Made by a program: the position numbers and the translations under genes. DNA of 64,000 bases from positions 61,318,001-61,382,000 of the forward strand of contig NC_043002.1 in NCBI RefSeq assembly GCF_006345805.1, written 5' to 3'. The first letter of the stretch is position 1. Each line of letters opens with the position of its first letter. Positions 10,828 through 63,661 of the stretch are shown here, piece by piece. The stretch is from Octopus sinensis. Taxonomy: Eukaryota. Below the pieces are notes generated by a model. That model ran no database searches, was not told where the DNA came from, and saw only the letters and a list, made by a program, of their open reading frames with translations.

Positions 10828-11631
10828 TCACTTCTGTCTAGAACATATTTTCTTTGTTTTGTATCTGAATTGCTTACTAATGCACACATATACAAGGAAA
10901 TTTAAACTGTTGTTTAAGCATGCGATAAAATCTGCAATTAGAAAGGATATCTGAATTGGGTTATACTCGTCTACGTTCACAATAATCGCAACAGGAACCG
11001 TTGTAGATATAAATATCACATTTATACTGATGACGAGCCGTATAGTATCCTTTGATTGCGTATTGTGTTGGTTATGTTGACCGAGATTTGGTCTATGAAT
11101 TAATTTGTATGACATAAGTATGTTGCTGATAACTAAAAGGGCTGCTGGCATAAAGGAGTATGAGATGGATAAAAATAAAACCATCAGTTTTTGCGGGACA
11201 ATTTCGCCGTATAATACTGCTGTGTTAATTACGAATATTGAAACAAATGCAATGGATCCCGCAATAATGAACCTATGGGTTGATGCGTTCAGAATTAGAA
11301 ATGGACAATAAACGGCCAACGTGCGTTCAACTGATATTATTACTGTTAACCATGAAGACATTTCGTTCGAAACTGTACTAATCAGGTTTACCAAAATGAA
11401 AACACTTTTTGAATATGTTAATCCGTAAGTTTCTAATATAATTTTCAGTGCATTCACCCATAATGTAATGATATCCACAGCCGCTAGTGAAATAAGACGA
11501 GGAGCAATTCTATAGTCCCTCATAGCTGTCGAACACGCAACTATTATTATAAGTATGTTGCCCAGAGTCCCCAGAATCATCAATGAAATGGAGCTGAAAC
11601 GAAGAGCACTATATATTCCAGTGTTATTCAT
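10828..11631 (-). CDS. Single-exon class A GPCR, paralogue 1 (267 aa from first ATG); peptide/FMRFamide-receptor-like motifs, orphan
   Basis: Seven hydrophobic segments with GTLGN (TM1), LAAVD (TM2), SSWLTVIISVERTLAVYCPF (TM3), SFMP (TM5), FISTTVP (TM6), NNSLNFLVY (TM7) and SKQFR (helix 8). The track start at 11658 is TTG; the first ATG is at 11631. Confidence 0.92.
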   Translation of the reverse strand: MNNTGIYSALRFSSISLMILGTLGNILIIIVACSTAMRDYRIAPRLISLAAVDIITLWVNALKIILETYGLTYSKSVFILVNLISTVSNEMSSWLTVIISVERTLAVYCPFLILNASTHRFIIAGSIAFVSIFVINTAVLYGEIVPQKLMVLFLSISYSFMPAALLVISNILMSYKLIHRPNLGQHNQHNTQSKDTIRLVISINVIFISTTVPVAIIVNVDEYNPIQISFLIADFIACLNNSLNFLVYVCISKQFRYKTKKICSRQK

Positions 11632-13519
11632 TATAATATATTTTCGCAATTTCTCCAAACTCCTTTATATTCGATGGTACATACAAAAAAAAATCGAACT
11701 TCAGTTGTTGCTGAAAGCAGAGTGGCTGACTGCTTACAACAATGTTATGAAAGTTGTTTGTAAGGTGTAGAAGGACAAAATATTTTTTTTTTATGTCGGA
11801 ACACTGGATATACACGGCAGAAATTCTAATTTTTAATATAATTCACACGAATGCATCTTACAAGGAAAGGAAAAAAATACGATCGGAAAAAAAAACAATA
11901 ATAAATATTTATAATTATTGCTTACCTTCCTTTAAATATCATATTTGCGTAAAAATAAAAAGAATATGAATGAAACATATTTTATAAAACGATCAAGCAT
12001 AAATAAAGGTATTCTAAAAACCTTAAACTATATTTACAGATATTCAAGGTGCTCCGTTGAAGAAGCACTGGCATGACACACACCGTTGGTAAGAAGCATT
12101 ACTGTTTTGATTCTCTTAGTAGCAGTGTGCTTCGCTTGTAATCTAACAAGTTTCAGTGTTAGTTTGTGACGCATGAGATGAATTAGGCACTAACAATTTC
12201 TTCTCAGAACCGTCCAAAATCAGGACAACCATTTATCAAAATAAATGGTAGTCTGCTTGTGAATATTCTTTATTTTCGCAGAAGGTGATATCTACTTAAG
12301 ACTGCATGAGTGAATACGTTAGTTATTTTTCAGAAGATAGGTTGTGATTTGGAGGCGATTTACGTGCAATGTCATACAAGTTAAATGAAACATTTGATGT
12401 TCAGTGGAAGATTCACAAAATGAGATCGATTTCCAGTTGTTGTCTTCATTTTATGGCTTACTTTGCACGAATTGAACTTGCACTTCGTTAACTCTGATCA
12501 AATATTGACAATATTATCTTTACTTTACATATTATATCATCTCTTGCTAATTTGATATTAAAACAAAACAAACTGGTTTTGAAGGAAATTTGACTATTAA
12601 TATTGGCAGGGCAGTAATGAAAGTCGAATTTCCATCTTTGGTCCACTGGCAATTAAATGAGAAAGCATCCGTTTGAGATATATTCTACGTTTTATTTGTA
12701 AACGCAGAAATAAAAAGGAAATAGGATTCCAATATTATTTTTGTTCACATCCTTGTAATAGATTTATATGCTATGTCCATAAGTTCATTGCTTCGAAATT
12801 CAGTAAAACATAAATAAATATATAGAATAATTGTTAGCAAAGTACTCCTTAAAATAATTTCTTTTCGCAGTCTAATTGAATGGTTTTCGTTGACATCTTT
12901 TTACAAATATTTTGTCTTTTATATCCTGGAAACGAAAATCTGCAACCTATATCAAAATGATTTATTTAATAAGAACATAAAACAAAAACAAAACAACGTT
13001 AGTTTATTGAATCTAATGCTGTAATCTTGTTTGTACGGCAATTATCTGGATATGTGGATAGACTTAATAATTTGCATTAGCCAGGCGTTAAATTAATAAA
13101 TGGCTTCCCTAACGTGTATTAGTAAATATTCATATCGTGTCACTAGTTGTTGAAGTATTAATAATTGGATCGACGGTCGAACCTACTATTTTCCCCATTC
13201 AATTATCTGCTTAAAATACGATAACTAGTTTCAGTAAAGCTAAAAGTCTACTTTAAACAATCATCTAGACGACTTTTCTATTCAGTTAATTCAATCAGCC
13301 TAATGCTTGCCAACACTTCGGTAAATAATATTACATTAATATATTAAGTTTGTAATATTATTTGAAAGAAAAAAAAGATCAATAATGATACAAACGGAAC
13401 ATGAATGTATTATTATATGGTTGATTTGTATATGAATAATAATACTGACAACAATAACAACAACAACAACAACAACAATAACAGCAATAGTAATAATGAT
13501 ATAATAATAATAACGATGT

Positions 13520-60720: not shown

Positions 60721-62737
60721 TATATATATATATATGTATATATGTATATATGTATATATAGATATATGTATATATATATATTATATATATATATATATTA
60801 TATATATATATATATGTATGTATATATGTATATATATATTATATATATGTATATATATATATGTATATATATGTATGTATATATATATATATATATATGT
60901 ATAATATATGTATGTATGTATATATATATGTATTTATATATATATATATAAAATATATATGTATATATATATATTATATATATACATATATATATACACA
61001 TGTTTATATATATATATATTATATTATATATATATATATATATAATATAATATATATATACATATATATATATATGACAAAGTAATGTTTTAAGATACCG
61101 CAGGAGTGGACATATATATAAAAGACAGTTTGTATTGCGAATTTTTTGTAAACTTTTAAAGATATCTCCTTCTGTGTTTATATACACTACCAAACAGCAT
61201 GATTTTTATTGAACTCCTAATAATTTTTGTTGAATATTTTCGTAAATACTTTCTTGTAAACAGTTTTAACATTTTGTTATTATTATCAAAGAATGTATAT
61301 AAATATTTTAATACTTTTGTGTCAACCAGTACTTAATACAATAAACCTTATACAAATCTTTACAGTTTACTTTTGACACTATTTTTCTGAAAAAAAGAAA
61401 ACGGTCAAGTGAATAAACCTTCTTATATATATATATATATATATATATAATAACAATTTAACAATAACACATATTCATACATATATGTACATACCTACAT
61501 CTATATGTATATATACATGCATATATATACATGCATATATATATATATATATATATATATATATATATATTATATATATATATGTACAGACAACCACAAA
61601 CAAACGTCTTTTTTAACAACGAAAAACTAAGTACAAGACAAACAATACAAGGAATATTCCCTTTCATCAGCTGTCCCTGGTTCGACTCAATGCGTGTTTC
61701 GAAGGTAAGGGCAGAACACGATCCGGCCGAAACAGTCCTTCCTGCAAAATGAATTTTAAAAAATTCTTTTGCAGAGGGGTAAAAAAAAGTGACGAGAACA
61801 GGACGTAAAATAATACAAATAGATAGAAATACAGTACACATAAAGAATAAAAACAGGACAAGGAAACCAACAATATATATATATATACATAGGCAAGTAT
61901 ATAATTTTTACAAATACGAATAATTCGTTGAAAGTGCCAAAATACTGAGTGGCGCACTGGCACAGTTTAGACCTGTTGTGGTCAATCGCAGTTGTGGTAC
62001 ACATGTCCGAATTTCTAATAGTTACATGGATTTGGAGATATTGTCTAGGTAAATTTTAATAACACACTTTTTCTTACCAAGCAGTCGTTTGCTCTGAAGA
62101 AAAACATCATTTGAAGTCAACATTGATTATCCAGACGTAATTTTACATTTCATTTAGGTCATCATGTACCATTGCAGTGATATCTGCCAGATATTCGATG
62201 TCATGCCTGGTTAAGTAGTCATGGCTGGTATCAATGATTTCAATTGAGTGTGGGATGTTGGAGGAGTTCACTGATGAAGATGCTCTTTATATTGGTGTAG
62301 CAGCTATATGATAATATTAATTGAGCGTCTCTTCTAAATCATATAAGTATTCTTTTCTGGGAAAATGAATAAAACTCTCTATTGTCCAATGCCTTGTAGA
62401 ACACAGAGGGGTTTTGACAAAAATTCCATACAATAGAAATAAGAATTAATAATTGTTAAATTAAACTCCAAATACGATCATGTTGATAATAAAAGTAGAA
62501 TTATGAATATGTGTCTCTATAAGTGTGTGAGACTGAAAATATTACGTATATATATATATATATATATATATCTATATATATATATATATATATATATATG
62601 TATATATATGTGTGTATGTTTGTGTATGTTTATGTGTGTATGTGTGTGTGTGACTGCGTGCTTGTTTAGAAATATTTAGATATAGTTAACAGTATTGAAA
62701 ACTTAAGAAGTAACTATAATCGAAACGTGTTTAATTA

Positions 62738-63661
62738 TTATAATTTTGTCTCAATATAATACATATTGCATCTATTGGTTCGGCTATGCTTCTTCATACA
62801 CATACGCTTCACATTTTCCCGAAACTTGTTACTCACTATGAAATACATGATAAAATTAACACAGTTATTCGTCAGGGATAGCGTCTCCAAAATTCTGTAA
62901 GTGGTATCAACATTGCAAGCCATAAATATTGTAGCCAGGATATAGATGGTAGGAGGAAACGTTGTTAACAGAAATACAATATTTATAGCAAGTACGATAT
63001 ACATTGAGTTCGTATTTCGTGTAGCACGGCTTCTATGAGAATTCTGACCGAGTTTCGGTCGACTGAATAATTTATAAATTAATATAATAGAGCTTAAAGC
63101 TAAACACGCTGCAGGTACCAAGGAATAGAAGACCATAGTGATTGCGAAAGAATAGGTGGGATTAGGTGTTACAAAAAATAGCATACATTCTGCAAAAATA
63201 TCAATGACAAGAAGAGGAAACATTACAATGCATGGGGGAACATTTCTTGTAGAAGAGAGTCGTGAAAATGGGCAATATACCGCCAACAAACGTTCAACAG
63301 AAATAATGACGGTGATCCAGGAAGAATACGTAGATAAAATATCAAGGATGATAATTAAGATGGTATTTTCAGTCAAGTTTGTAACTGTTCGCGTAAAATC
63401 CAAATTACACGATATCCAGATATTTCTTATACAAGTGGTCAAGATTAGAAAAGTATCGACAATAAGAAGGCAGAGAAGATATGGATTAATCTTACATTTC
63501 GGGATGGATTTGCTGCAAAATATTACTATCGTGGTTACATTACCGATAGTTCCAAAAATTAACAAAACTATTGATACATAACACACAGAAAGGATGGCAG
63601 AAATACTTGTTGTATTATGTTCGAGGGTACAGTTTATAAATATGCCGCTTTCTGTAACCAT
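62738..63661 (-). CDS. Single-exon class A GPCR, paralogue 4 (307 aa from first ATG)
   Basis: Gap-free alignment to GPCR3 (about 72% identity by manual count). The track start at 63916 is TTG and runs through a microsatellite; the first ATG is at 63661. Confidence 0.94.
   Translation of the reverse strand: MVTESGIFINCTLEHNTTSISAILSVCYVSIVLLIFGTIGNVTTIVIFCSKSIPKCKINPYLLCLLIVDTFLILTTCIRNIWISCNLDFTRTVTNLTENTILIIILDILSTYSSWITVIISVERLLAVYCPFSRLSSTRNVPPCIVMFPLLVIDIFAECMLFFVTPNPTYSFAITMVFYSLVPAACLALSSIILIYKLFSRPKLGQNSHRSRATRNTNSMYIVLAINIVFLLTTFPPTIYILATIFMACNVDTTYRILETLSLTNNCVNFIMYFIVSNKFRENVKRMCMKKHSRTNRCNMYYIETKL

What the first reader, a model, noticed from the sequence alone, without database searches (positions are those of the whole stretch)
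10828..63661. Tandem cluster of four intact, single-exon, divergent orphan GPCRs: candidate lineage-specific chemosensory family
Seen: four co-oriented intronless 7TM ORFs (267, 300, 307 and 307 aa), all free of stops and frameshifts although every transposon around them is decayed. They have very short N-termini and loops. Established: ERxxAVxxP, TM5 PxxxLxxxN/S and NxxxNFxxY are motifs of the FMRFamide/peptide-receptor-like branch of class A, and clustered intronless divergent class A genes are typical of animal chemoreceptor expansions. Inference: a birth-and-death receptor family of a cephalopod, possibly GPCR chemoreceptors distinct from the ion-channel chemotactile receptors. The cluster may extend beyond the window.
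Basis: partly seen in the sequence, partly recalled or inferred. Interest (0 to 1): 0.75.

Follow-up and report, generated by a model that had tools for sequence, protein, structure and literature searches.

The report
Four-gene octopus-type orphan GPCR cluster
The window really carries four intact, intron-free receptor genes of a fast-evolving octopus-lineage branch of the GPR139/FMRFamide-receptor-like GPCRs, but clusters of this kind are already catalogued in cephalopods and a smell/taste role is still only a guess.

Summary
Four co-oriented minus-strand ORFs of 267, 300, 307 and 307 aa each encode a complete class A 7TM receptor: Pfam 7tm_1/Srw hits, an AlphaFold model with 7 helices plus helix 8, and Foldseek TM about 0.7 to solved GPCRs. 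The window holds no further copies or pseudogene fragments.

- **Family:** they fall in the GPR139 / FMRFamide-receptor-like / Srw branch, marked by ERxxAVxxP and NxxxNFxxY. The nearest named relatives are uncharacterised Octopus bimaculoides proteins.
- **Host:** repeats are shared with an O. bimaculoides chromosome, so the host is octopod-like. The species was not identified.
- **Selection:** G1 and G2 each pair one-to-one with a gene in another sequenced animal (dS about 0.34, dN/dS 0.43-0.50). Their reading frames are indel-free while the flanks are gap-ridden.
- **Recent duplicates:** G3 and G4 have dS 0.19 and dN/dS 0.89. Their amino-acid changes concentrate in the extracellular half (41% vs 16%, p = 3e-6).

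They are therefore very probably functional receptors with a diversifying ligand side. A chemosensory role is plausible but untested. Published cephalopod class A expansions are expressed mostly in gills, testes and other non-brain tissues.

Verdict: new members of a known kind, of modest interest.

The parts
10828..11631 (-). G1: 267-aa single-exon class A GPCR, the most divergent of the four (30-36% identity to the others)
   Evidence: ORF. Pfam Srw 36.8 bits against a cut-off of 22.2. It pairs with P0006 on locus L004: 70% aa, dN/dS 0.50. The CDS is 82% identical with one in-frame 6-nt gap, against 74-79% identity and many gaps in the flanks.
25913..26815 (-). G2: 300-aa single-exon class A GPCR
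   Evidence: ORF. Pfam 7tm_1 40.4 bits against a cut-off of 30.5. It pairs with P0005 on locus L003: 74% aa, dN/dS 0.43. The CDS is 83% identical with no gaps, against 74-75% identity with gaps downstream.
48001..48924 (-). G3: 307-aa single-exon class A GPCR, recent paralogue of G4
   Evidence: ORF. Pfam Srw 43.8 and 7tm_1 34.2 bits. AlphaFold model with pLDDT 76.6, seven helices plus helix 8. Foldseek TM about 0.7 to SSTR, opioid and GPR139 structures.
62738..63661 (-). G4: 307-aa single-exon class A GPCR, recent paralogue of G3
   Evidence: 72% aa and 85.6% nt identity to G3 over 1094 bp. dS 0.185, dN/dS 0.89. Differences are concentrated in the extracellular half. The mechanical ORF runs on to 63916 only because an (ATT)n microsatellite happens to read through.
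47978..49070 (-). Duplicated unit shared by G3 and G4 (partner 62715-63808): the CDS plus about 25 bp 3' and about 146 bp 5', bounded by microsatellites
   Evidence: Self-blastn; flank sequences.

Best explanation
The four ORFs are functional paralogous genes of an octopod-lineage clade inside the GPR139 / FMRFamide-receptor-like / Srw branch of class A GPCRs.

**How the cluster arose**
- The cluster arose by old local duplications. G1, G2 and the G3/G4 ancestor differ by 57-70% in protein, and synonymous sites are saturated.
- One recent duplication then produced G3 and G4.

**How each protein is inferred to work**
- Each protein is a minimal 7TM receptor with a glycosylatable short N-terminus and almost no ECL2.
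- It is inferred to bind a ligand in the transmembrane pocket and signal through heterotrimeric G proteins.
- It would use the retained core: TM1 GN, TM2 D, TM3 S..W....ER, TM6 F.....P, TM7 N...N(F)..Y, and helix 8 F-R with a downstream Cys.

**Selection**
- Selection keeps the reading frame and the cytoplasmic half.
- The ligand-facing half changes fast, so different copies most likely recognise different ligands.

**Likely role (inferred, not shown)**
- My best guess is a set of peripheral sensors of small molecules or short peptides.
- I put external chemoreception at about 0.35 and an internal or peripheral signalling role, such as gill or gonad, at about 0.35.
- The confidence given below is for the gene-family and mechanism statement, not for chemoreception.
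For: **Receptor identity**
- Pfam hits.
- A 24-sequence profile hits GPR139 at E = 3.6e-26 and then hundreds of class A receptors.
- The AF2 model has the 7TM fold, and Foldseek gives probability 1.00 and TM about 0.7.

**Conserved core across 24 family members (G3 numbering)**
- Invariant: D69, S113, W115, R124, P131, P183, F230, P236, N269, Y273.

**Constraint**
- Orthologue-like pairs give dN/dS 0.43-0.50.
- The CDS is indel-free or has an in-frame gap, while flanks at 74-79% identity carry about 10% gap columns.
- Random substitution at the observed G3/G4 divergence leaves an open frame in only 5% of trials (70 substitutions) or 0.3% (140 substitutions).

**Diversifying ligand side**
- G3/G4 differences are 41% in the extracellular half against 16% in the intracellular half, OR 3.5, p = 3e-6.
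- The same direction appears in four other pairs.
- Omega is 1.12 in the extracellular half and 0.61 in the intracellular half.

**Lineage**
- Only 23 clusters at 50% identity reach E < 1e-30 among 1.84 billion representatives.
- The named ones are O. bimaculoides proteins.
- Repeats are shared with an O. bimaculoides chromosome.

**Architecture**
- It matches the Aplysia candidate chemoreceptors: intronless, short N-terminus, genes 9-13 kb apart with a retrotransposon between them (PMC2700072).
Against: - There is no expression evidence of any kind. The related contigs appear to be genomic: they break at the same microsatellites and align through non-coding flanks.
- dN/dS of 0.89 for G3/G4 is compatible with one copy drifting neutrally. 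The extracellular omega is not significantly above 1 (bootstrap 0.69-1.95).
- Faster change on the extracellular side is common to GPCRs generally.
- The canonical toggle W6.48, P7.50 and the TM3-ECL2 disulfide are missing. This is the norm for this branch, GPR139 included, but it leaves G-protein coupling inferred rather than shown.
- The tree is a neighbour-joining tree without support values.
Confidence: 0.8

Rival explanations
1. They are external chemoreceptors (olfactory, gustatory or contact) of the sucker epithelium, olfactory organ, lips or skin. In that case they would be a GPCR route to chemical sensing alongside the ionotropic chemotactile receptors.
For: - Tandem, intronless, lineage-restricted genes with relaxed constraint.
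- Variation is concentrated in the ligand-facing half.
- The gene architecture matches the Aplysia AcCR genes, which are expressed in rhinophore and tentacle epithelium (PMC2700072).
- The best Pfam match is the nematode chemoreceptor family Srw.
- Lineage-specific class A expansions in Lophotrochozoa have been argued to be chemosensory (PMC11886862).
Against: - There are no expression or ligand data.
- Cephalopod-specific class A expansions were found mainly in gills, testes and assorted tissues, not specifically in suckers (PMC6408891).
- Cephalopods have few such expansions, and the cited authors suggest the ion-channel receptors have taken over this role.
- G1 and G2 keep one-to-one partners at dS 0.34, which is less turnover than is typical for odorant-receptor-like families.
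Confidence: 0.35
2. They are receptors for endogenous ligands, either FMRFamide-related or other lineage-specific peptides, or amino-acid-like metabolites as for GPR139. In that case they would act in internal or peripheral physiology such as gill, gonad or the peripheral nervous system.
For: - They belong to the FMRFamide-receptor-like / GPR139 branch.
- The best structural neighbours are peptide receptors: SSTR, opioid, galanin.
- One-to-one orthologue-like pairs with omega 0.43-0.50 exist for G1 and G2.
- Published expression of cephalopod-specific class A expansions is in gills and testes (PMC6408891).
- In Lymnaea about 450 FMRFamide_R-like genes lie in tandem clusters, and some are differentially expressed between reproductive organs (PMC11589774).
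Against: - No orthology to any deorphanised receptor was seen. Single-sequence similarity to solved receptors reaches only E about 1e-3.
- An ECL2 of about 3 residues, with no hairpin and no disulfide, is unlike most peptide receptors.
- Omega is far higher than is usual for conserved neuropeptide receptors.
Confidence: 0.35
3. One or more copies, especially one of G3/G4, are young unexpressed duplicates or incipient pseudogenes that have not yet acquired a disabling mutation.
For: - G3/G4 dN/dS is 0.89.
- About 5% of simulated neutral lineages keep the frame open at this divergence.
- The duplicated unit is only about 1.1 kb and is bounded by microsatellites, so a copy may have lost its regulatory DNA.
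Against: - Differences are strongly non-random. The intracellular half has omega 0.61 and TM2, TM3 and TM5 cytoplasmic halves are almost unchanged, at 0-1 differences per 14-16 residues.
- There are no indels between G3 and G4 over 921 nt.
- Every core residue is retained in both copies.
Confidence: 0.1

Closest known systems
Cephalopod-specific class A GPCR expansions (groups 1 and 2 of Ritschard et al. 2019, PMC6408891) and the cephalopod lineage-specific class A expansions catalogued by Nath et al. 2025 (PMC11886862)
   Same: Rhodopsin-class receptors restricted to cephalopods. They are partly in tandem on scaffolds, nested among molluscan peptide-receptor-like sequences, show signs of accelerated evolution, and have been proposed as sensory or peripheral receptors.
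   Different: I could not map these four genes onto the published gene lists: the supplementary tables use other identifiers and hold no sequences. The exact proteins are not on record in the protein collection searched.
Aplysia californica candidate chemosensory receptors AcCRa-c (Cummins et al. 2009, PMC2700072)
   Same: Intronless rhodopsin-like genes with a short N-terminus. TM3 carries an ...ITxxxxxER(C/L)L... motif and TM7 an N(S/N)SVN motif. Genes lie 9-13 kb apart with a non-LTR retrotransposon between them.
   Different: They come from another molluscan class. Sequence relationship was not tested directly because no AcCR sequence was available to the tools. AcCRs have demonstrated expression in sensory epithelium; these genes do not.
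Human GPR139 (PDB 7vug, 9m42)
   Same: It is the best solved-structure match: E = 3.6e-26 with the family profile. It shares S-W-ITV in TM3, [DE]RxxAVxxP and NxxxNFxxY.
   Different: Only about 18-20% identity. GPR139 has a longer ECL2 and a canonical DRY. It is a single conserved vertebrate gene, not a tandem family.
Nematode Srw chemoreceptor family (Pfam PF10324) / FMRFamide_R-like receptors of gastropods (Lymnaea, about 450 genes, PMC11589774)
   Same: Srw is the best Pfam model for G1, G3 and G4, above the gathering score. Both are large, tandemly clustered expansions of the same branch.
   Different: The hits cover mainly the TM5-TM7 half at E = 1e-9 to 1e-11. G2 does not hit Srw. These are independent expansions in other phyla or classes.

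Membership tests
Class A (rhodopsin-like) GPCR | Seven transmembrane helices plus helix 8, with the class A fold | tested here: met
   The AF2 model of G3 has 7 helices plus helix 8, pLDDT 76.6, pTM 0.75. Foldseek gives 943 PDB matches at E <= 0.001, all of the top 50 listed being class A GPCRs, TM about 0.7.
Class A (rhodopsin-like) GPCR | Pfam 7tm_1 at or above the gathering score | tested here: inconclusive
   G2 scores 40.4 and G3 34.2 bits, above the cut-off of 30.5. G4 scores 22.8, below it, and G1 is not listed. G1, G3 and G4 pass the related Srw model instead.
Class A (rhodopsin-like) GPCR | Core microswitch residues (N1.50, D2.50, R3.50, P6.50, N7.49, Y7.53) | tested here: met
   These are invariant or nearly invariant in the 24-sequence alignment.
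Class A (rhodopsin-like) GPCR | CWxP toggle Trp, NPxxY proline and the TM3-ECL2 disulfide | tested here: not met
   TM6 reads TTFP, TM7 reads NFxxY, and there is no conserved extracellular Cys pair. The same departures occur throughout this branch, and NFxxY also in GPR139, so they do not exclude class A membership.
GPR139 / FMRFamide-receptor-like / Srw branch | TM7 NxxxNFxxY in place of NPxxY | tested here: met
   Present in all four genes, in 133 of the 150 best relatives against 3 with NPxxY, and in GPR139 as NTAINFFLY.
GPR139 / FMRFamide-receptor-like / Srw branch | [DE]RxxAVxxP at the TM3/ICL2 junction | tested here: met
   All four read ER(L/T)LAV(Y/C)CPF. The motif occurs in 62 of 150 relatives. 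GPR139 reads DRYIAVCHP.
GPR139 / FMRFamide-receptor-like / Srw branch | Pfam Srw at or above the gathering score | tested here: inconclusive
   G1 scores 36.8, G3 43.8 and G4 39.4 bits against a cut-off of 22.2. G2 has no Srw hit.
GPR139 / FMRFamide-receptor-like / Srw branch | Activation by FMRFamide-type peptides (or by aromatic amino acids, as for GPR139) | not testable with these tools
   This needs a heterologous expression assay.
Molluscan lineage-specific candidate chemoreceptor GPCRs (AcCR-type / LSE sensu Nath et al.) | Intronless coding region and tandem arrangement | tested here: met
   Four complete single ORFs on the same strand, 13.8-21.2 kb apart.
Molluscan lineage-specific candidate chemoreceptor GPCRs (AcCR-type / LSE sensu Nath et al.) | No one-to-one orthologues between species | tested here: inconclusive
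   No orthologue was seen outside the octopod-like set. G1 and G2 nevertheless pair one-to-one with genes of another, unidentified, related animal at dS 0.34. G3/G4 have only a more distant counterpart at dS 0.74.
Molluscan lineage-specific candidate chemoreceptor GPCRs (AcCR-type / LSE sensu Nath et al.) | Expression in chemosensory epithelium | not testable with these tools
   No transcriptome could be queried.
Conserved bilaterian neuropeptide-receptor orthogroup | Clear one-to-one orthologue in other phyla or a deorphanised receptor | tested here: not met
   Single-sequence similarity to solved receptors reaches only E about 1e-3. Named non-cephalopod hits (Elysia, Mytilus, rotifers) are 22-27% identical over most of the query; two rotifer hits at 35-38% cover only 7-11% of it. 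Scores fall continuously from the family into generic class A receptors.

The most novel reading that the evidence does not exclude
This octopod-restricted clade consists of minimal-loop GPR139-like receptors with almost no ECL2, no toggle Trp and no disulfide. It could be a true GPCR-based external chemosensory system of octopuses, with recent duplicates such as G3/G4 tuned to different waterborne or contact compounds, for instance amino acids by analogy with GPR139. It would work in parallel with the ion-channel chemotactile receptors.
Probability: 0.25. Interest if true: 0.6.

Novelty: new member of a known kind. Interest (0 to 1): 0.3.

Why it matters
Octopus contact chemosensation is at present explained by ion-channel chemotactile receptors. 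Whether cephalopods also use GPCR chemoreceptors, as gastropods apparently do, remains open.

This cluster offers four small, intronless and easily cloned candidates. They include a recent pair, G3 and G4, whose differences sit on the ligand side, which makes a convenient natural experiment for ligand-specificity mapping.

In itself the finding adds members to families that genome-wide surveys have already described. It does not change the picture unless expression and ligands are shown.

Tried and rejected
- **Species identification.** The exact proteins are not on record. SRA run numbers of the related contigs (SRR11869384, 91, 94) occur in no paper held. A search with the mariner transposase returned only unnamed Logan/ENA proteins, best 87%. 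It showed that intact relatives are 350 aa but gave no species. The host therefore stays 'octopod-like'.
- **Mapping to published groups.** I tried to place the genes in Ritschard's groups 1-4 or Nath's lists. No supplementary text is held for the latter. The former's tables use Ocbim/cluster identifiers without sequences.
- **Albertin et al. 2015.** The octopus genome paper could not be read. My recollection that it counted Aplysia-like candidate chemoreceptors among octopus GPCRs is memory only.
- **Additional copies or pseudogenes in the window.** None found.
- **Retroposition as the origin of G4.** The 1.1-kb shared unit is suggestive, but both ends run into microsatellites and there is no poly(A) remnant. 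This is left undecided.
- **tRNA and Rfam scans.** Nothing found.
- **Positive selection.** Extracellular omega is 1.12, not significantly above 1.

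
Full report
**1. The observation**

Listing ORFs of at least 150 aa gives four long minus-strand ORFs at 10828-11658, 25913-26815, 48001-48942 and 62738-63916. Counted from the first ATG they are 267, 300, 307 and 307 aa, with ATGs at 11631, 26815, 48924 and 63661.

The 392-aa mechanical ORF of the fourth gene is an artefact. An (ATT)n microsatellite just upstream happens to read as poly-Ile.

Mononucleotide shuffles of this AT-rich window (about 35% G+C) never gave an ORF longer than 212 aa in 200 trials. 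A tblastn of the four proteins and 18 relatives against the window finds these four places and nothing else. There are therefore no pseudogene fragments and no partial fifth copy at either edge.

**2. What the proteins are**

Pfam scores:

| Gene | 7tm_1 (cut-off 30.5) | Srw (cut-off 22.2) |
|---|---|---|
| G1 | not listed | 36.8 |
| G2 | 40.4 | no hit |
| G3 | 34.2 | 43.8 |
| G4 | 22.8 | 39.4 |

There are also weaker Srbc and Srsx hits.

- **Identity among the four:** they are 32-34% identical to G1, and G3/G4 are 72% identical to each other.
- **Model:** an AlphaFold model of G3, built on a 24-sequence family alignment, has pLDDT 76.6 and pTM 0.75. It shows seven long helices plus helix 8.
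- **Fold search:** Foldseek against the PDB returns only class A GPCRs at the top (somatostatin, opioid, adrenergic, GPR139). Probability is 1.00 and TM is about 0.65-0.73.
- **Extracellular surface:** the model confirms it is minimal. The N-terminus is about 10-20 residues, ECL2 about 3 residues (helix 143-164 to helix 168-200) and ICL3 about 9.
- **N-terminal sequons:** all four have an N-X-S/T sequon in the N-terminus.
- **Invariant positions across 24 family members (G3 numbering):** TM2 Asp (D69), TM3 S113/W115/R124, ICL2 P131, a TM5 Pro (P183), TM6 F230/P236, and TM7 N269/Y273.
- **Departures:** the toggle Trp of CWxP, the Pro of NPxxY and a conserved extracellular Cys pair are all absent.

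**3. Which branch of class A**

ER..AV..P, a TM5 Pro and N...NF..Y are present in all four.
- **Relatives:** among the 150 best hits of an exhaustive profile search, 133 carry N...NF..Y and only 3 carry NP..Y. ER..A[VIL]..P occurs in 62.
- **Solved structures:** the best match is human GPR139. E is 3.9e-13 with the 4-sequence profile and 3.6e-26 with the 24-sequence profile. Its aligned sequence has SIWITV, DRYIAVCHP and NTAINFFLY at the same places.
- **Single sequence:** G3 alone reaches only E about 1e-3 against any solved receptor.

These are therefore genuinely divergent orphans of the GPR139 / FMRFamide-receptor-like / Srw branch. That Srw is the nematode chemoreceptor family closest to FMRFamide-type peptide receptors is my own background knowledge, not a tool result.

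**4. Relatives and host**

The profile search of 1.84 billion representatives found 23 clusters at E < 1e-30 and 967 at E < 1e-10. Scores decline continuously into generic receptors.

- The closest sequences come from Logan assemblies of one set of sequencing runs (SRR11869384, 91, 94) and from UniParc entries.
- Three named relatives are all Octopus bimaculoides: P0019 = A0A0L8GGA3, P0024 = XP_014770947.1 ('uncharacterized protein LOC106869642') and P0014 = A0A0L8II40.
- The unnamed UniParc entries (P0002, P0003, P0008 and others) have accession numbers in the same narrow range. They are probably from the same proteome; this is an inference.
- More distant named hits are from Elysia, Mytilus and rotifers. 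Those covering most of the query are 22-27% identical.
- A 20.9-kb stretch of O. bimaculoides chromosome CM046609.1 around P0024 shares 21 interspersed-repeat matches with the window at roughly 70-90% identity.

The host is therefore an octopod or a close relative. It is apparently not identical to O. bimaculoides as annotated, since the best O. bimaculoides-like match to G3/G4 is 62-64%. Attempts to name the species failed.

**5. History of the cluster**

A neighbour-joining tree without support values places the four genes in one clade with about eleven other clusters. It pairs G1 with P0006, G2 with P0005, and (G3, G4) with P0001.

Nei-Gojobori estimates:

| Pair | dS | dN/dS |
|---|---|---|
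| G1 / P0006 | 0.34 | 0.50 |
| G2 / P0005 | 0.34 | 0.43 |
| G3 / G4 | 0.185 | 0.89 |
| G3 or G4 / P0001 | 0.74 | about 0.39 |
| G2 / G3 | above 1 | — |

- The three lineages in the window are therefore old.
- G1 and G2 have kept one-to-one partners in another species.
- G3/G4 is a duplication younger than that species split.
- The other species lacks, or was not assembled for, a close counterpart of G3/G4.

This is some gene turnover, but not the pseudogene-littered picture of a classical birth-and-death family.

The DNA shared by G3 and G4 is only 1094 bp at 85.6% identity (47978-49070 against 62715-63808). It ends in microsatellites on both sides. Whether the duplication was segmental or RNA-mediated cannot be decided.

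**6. Are they functional**

- **Orthologous contigs:** they align through non-coding flanks at 74-79% identity with about 10% gap columns. The coding regions are 82-83% identical, with no gaps in G2 or a single in-frame 6-nt gap in G1. That shows selection on the frame.
- **G3/G4 frame:** 140 nucleotide differences over 921 nt and no indel. Random substitutions at half or all of that number leave the frame open in 5% and 0.3% of simulations respectively.
- **Distribution of G3/G4 changes:** 58 of 143 positions differ in the extracellular half (N-terminus, ECLs, outer halves of helices). Only 27 of 164 differ in the intracellular half (Fisher p = 3.3e-6).
- **Cytoplasmic helices:** the cytoplasmic halves of TM2, TM3 and TM5 have 0-1 changes each.
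- **Other pairs:** the same bias, though weaker, is seen in the orthologue pairs.
- **Omega by half:** 1.12 (bootstrap 0.69-1.95) for the outer half and 0.61 for the inner half.

I conclude that all four are very probably functional receptors whose signalling side is conserved and whose ligand side is diverging. Positive selection is suggested but not demonstrated.

**7. Surroundings**

- **Mariner:** two inverted copies of one family lie at 30942-32262 and 56752-58355, 93% identical to each other. Their ORFs are 228 and 186 aa, whereas intact relatives are 350 aa.
- **LINE:** its reverse transcriptase (38486-39598) and zf-RVT part (37165-38052) lie in separate ORFs.
- **No tRNA or Rfam family** was found.

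**8. Function and comparison with the literature**

Nothing in the sequence says where the genes are expressed or what they bind.

- **For chemoreception:** the cluster has the same architecture as the Aplysia AcCR candidate chemoreceptors. Those are intronless, have a short N-terminus, lie 9-13 kb apart with a retrotransposon between, and are expressed in rhinophore and tentacle epithelium (PMC2700072). The general argument that lineage-specific class A expansions in Lophotrochozoa are chemosensory also applies (PMC11886862).
- **Against chemoreception, or for an internal role:**
  - Ritschard et al. found that the two cephalopod-specific class A expansions sit within a molluscan peptide-receptor clade.
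  - Those expansions are expressed mainly in testes (group 2), gills (group 1 in Callistoctopus) and assorted tissues. The sucker, skin and axial-nerve-cord signal belonged to class B expansions (PMC6408891).
  - Nath et al. found that cephalopods have few such expansions and suggested the ionotropic chemotactile receptors compensate.
  - In Lymnaea, about 450 FMRFamide_R-like genes lie in tandem clusters, and some differ in expression between reproductive organs (PMC11589774).

I therefore rate external chemoreception and endogenous or peripheral signalling about equally, at roughly 0.35 each.

**9. Verdict**

The family assignment is correct, and the cephalopod attribution is supported at the level of 'octopod-like'.

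The chemosensory reading is a reasonable hypothesis without direct support. The general phenomenon is already published, so these are new members of a known kind. The G3/G4 pair is a neat handle for ligand-specificity work, which gives the finding modest practical interest.

Noticed in passing
window 45829-47978: A roughly 1.05-kb unit is repeated in tandem at 97% identity in a very AT-rich stretch (24% G+C for 46-48 kb). It ends exactly where the G3/G4 homology begins, 25 bp past the G3 stop codon. Internal inverted matches lie at 46365-46759 against 47413-47806.
   Followed up: partly
window 30942-32262 and 56752-58355: Two copies of one mariner (Tc1/mariner, Transposase_1) family lie in opposite orientation, 93% identical. 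Both are truncated or frameshifted, with ORFs of 228 and 186 aa. The closest intact transposase in the databases is 350 aa, 87% identical, and stands for 79 member sequences.
   Followed up: yes
window 37165-39598: A broken non-LTR retrotransposon on the minus strand has its RVT_1 domain (370-aa ORF) and its zf-RVT part (295-aa ORF starting with poly-K/R/E) in separate ORFs. It is flanked by long (ATT)n / (TAT)n microsatellites at 39783-40121 and 40665-40967.
   Followed up: partly
window 3444-4466, 15599-16187, 19027-19428 (also 9551-9783, 29731-29932): A SINE-like unit of about 184 bp, containing ...GAGTTCAAATTCCGCCGAGGTCGAC..., occurs in short tandem arrays and as scattered copies. Copies at 76-84% identity also occur in the O. 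bimaculoides locus L008 (11183-11340).
   Followed up: partly
window 54000-58000: A block of unusually high G+C (40-48% against about 33% elsewhere) carries ORFs of 151 and 169 aa (55809-56264, 56300-56809) with no Pfam match. It is probably another mobile element next to the second mariner copy.
   Followed up: partly
L007 20603-20667; window 45829-45895, 46878-46944, 54618-54677, 62586-62650: A 65-bp element is 83-96% identical between the window (four places, one just 3' of G4) and an ENA contig (ERZ21867824) that carries a distant family member, P0017. Nothing else in that 21-kb locus matches the window.
   Followed up: no
L004 45-1773 against window 11632-13412: The 1.7 kb upstream of G1 is alignable with the other species at 74-79%. 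The most distal part (900-1780 bp upstream) is slightly better conserved, at 78.5%, than the proximal part. This may be neutral, or it may be a 5' UTR or regulatory region.
   Followed up: partly
window 63662-63916 and 48925-49200: Both G3 and G4 have a long (ATT)n/(AGT)n microsatellite about 60 bp upstream of the ATG and a (TA)n tract about 30 bp after the stop. The Logan contigs of the related gene P0001 (L001, L002) break at the corresponding points.
   Followed up: partly
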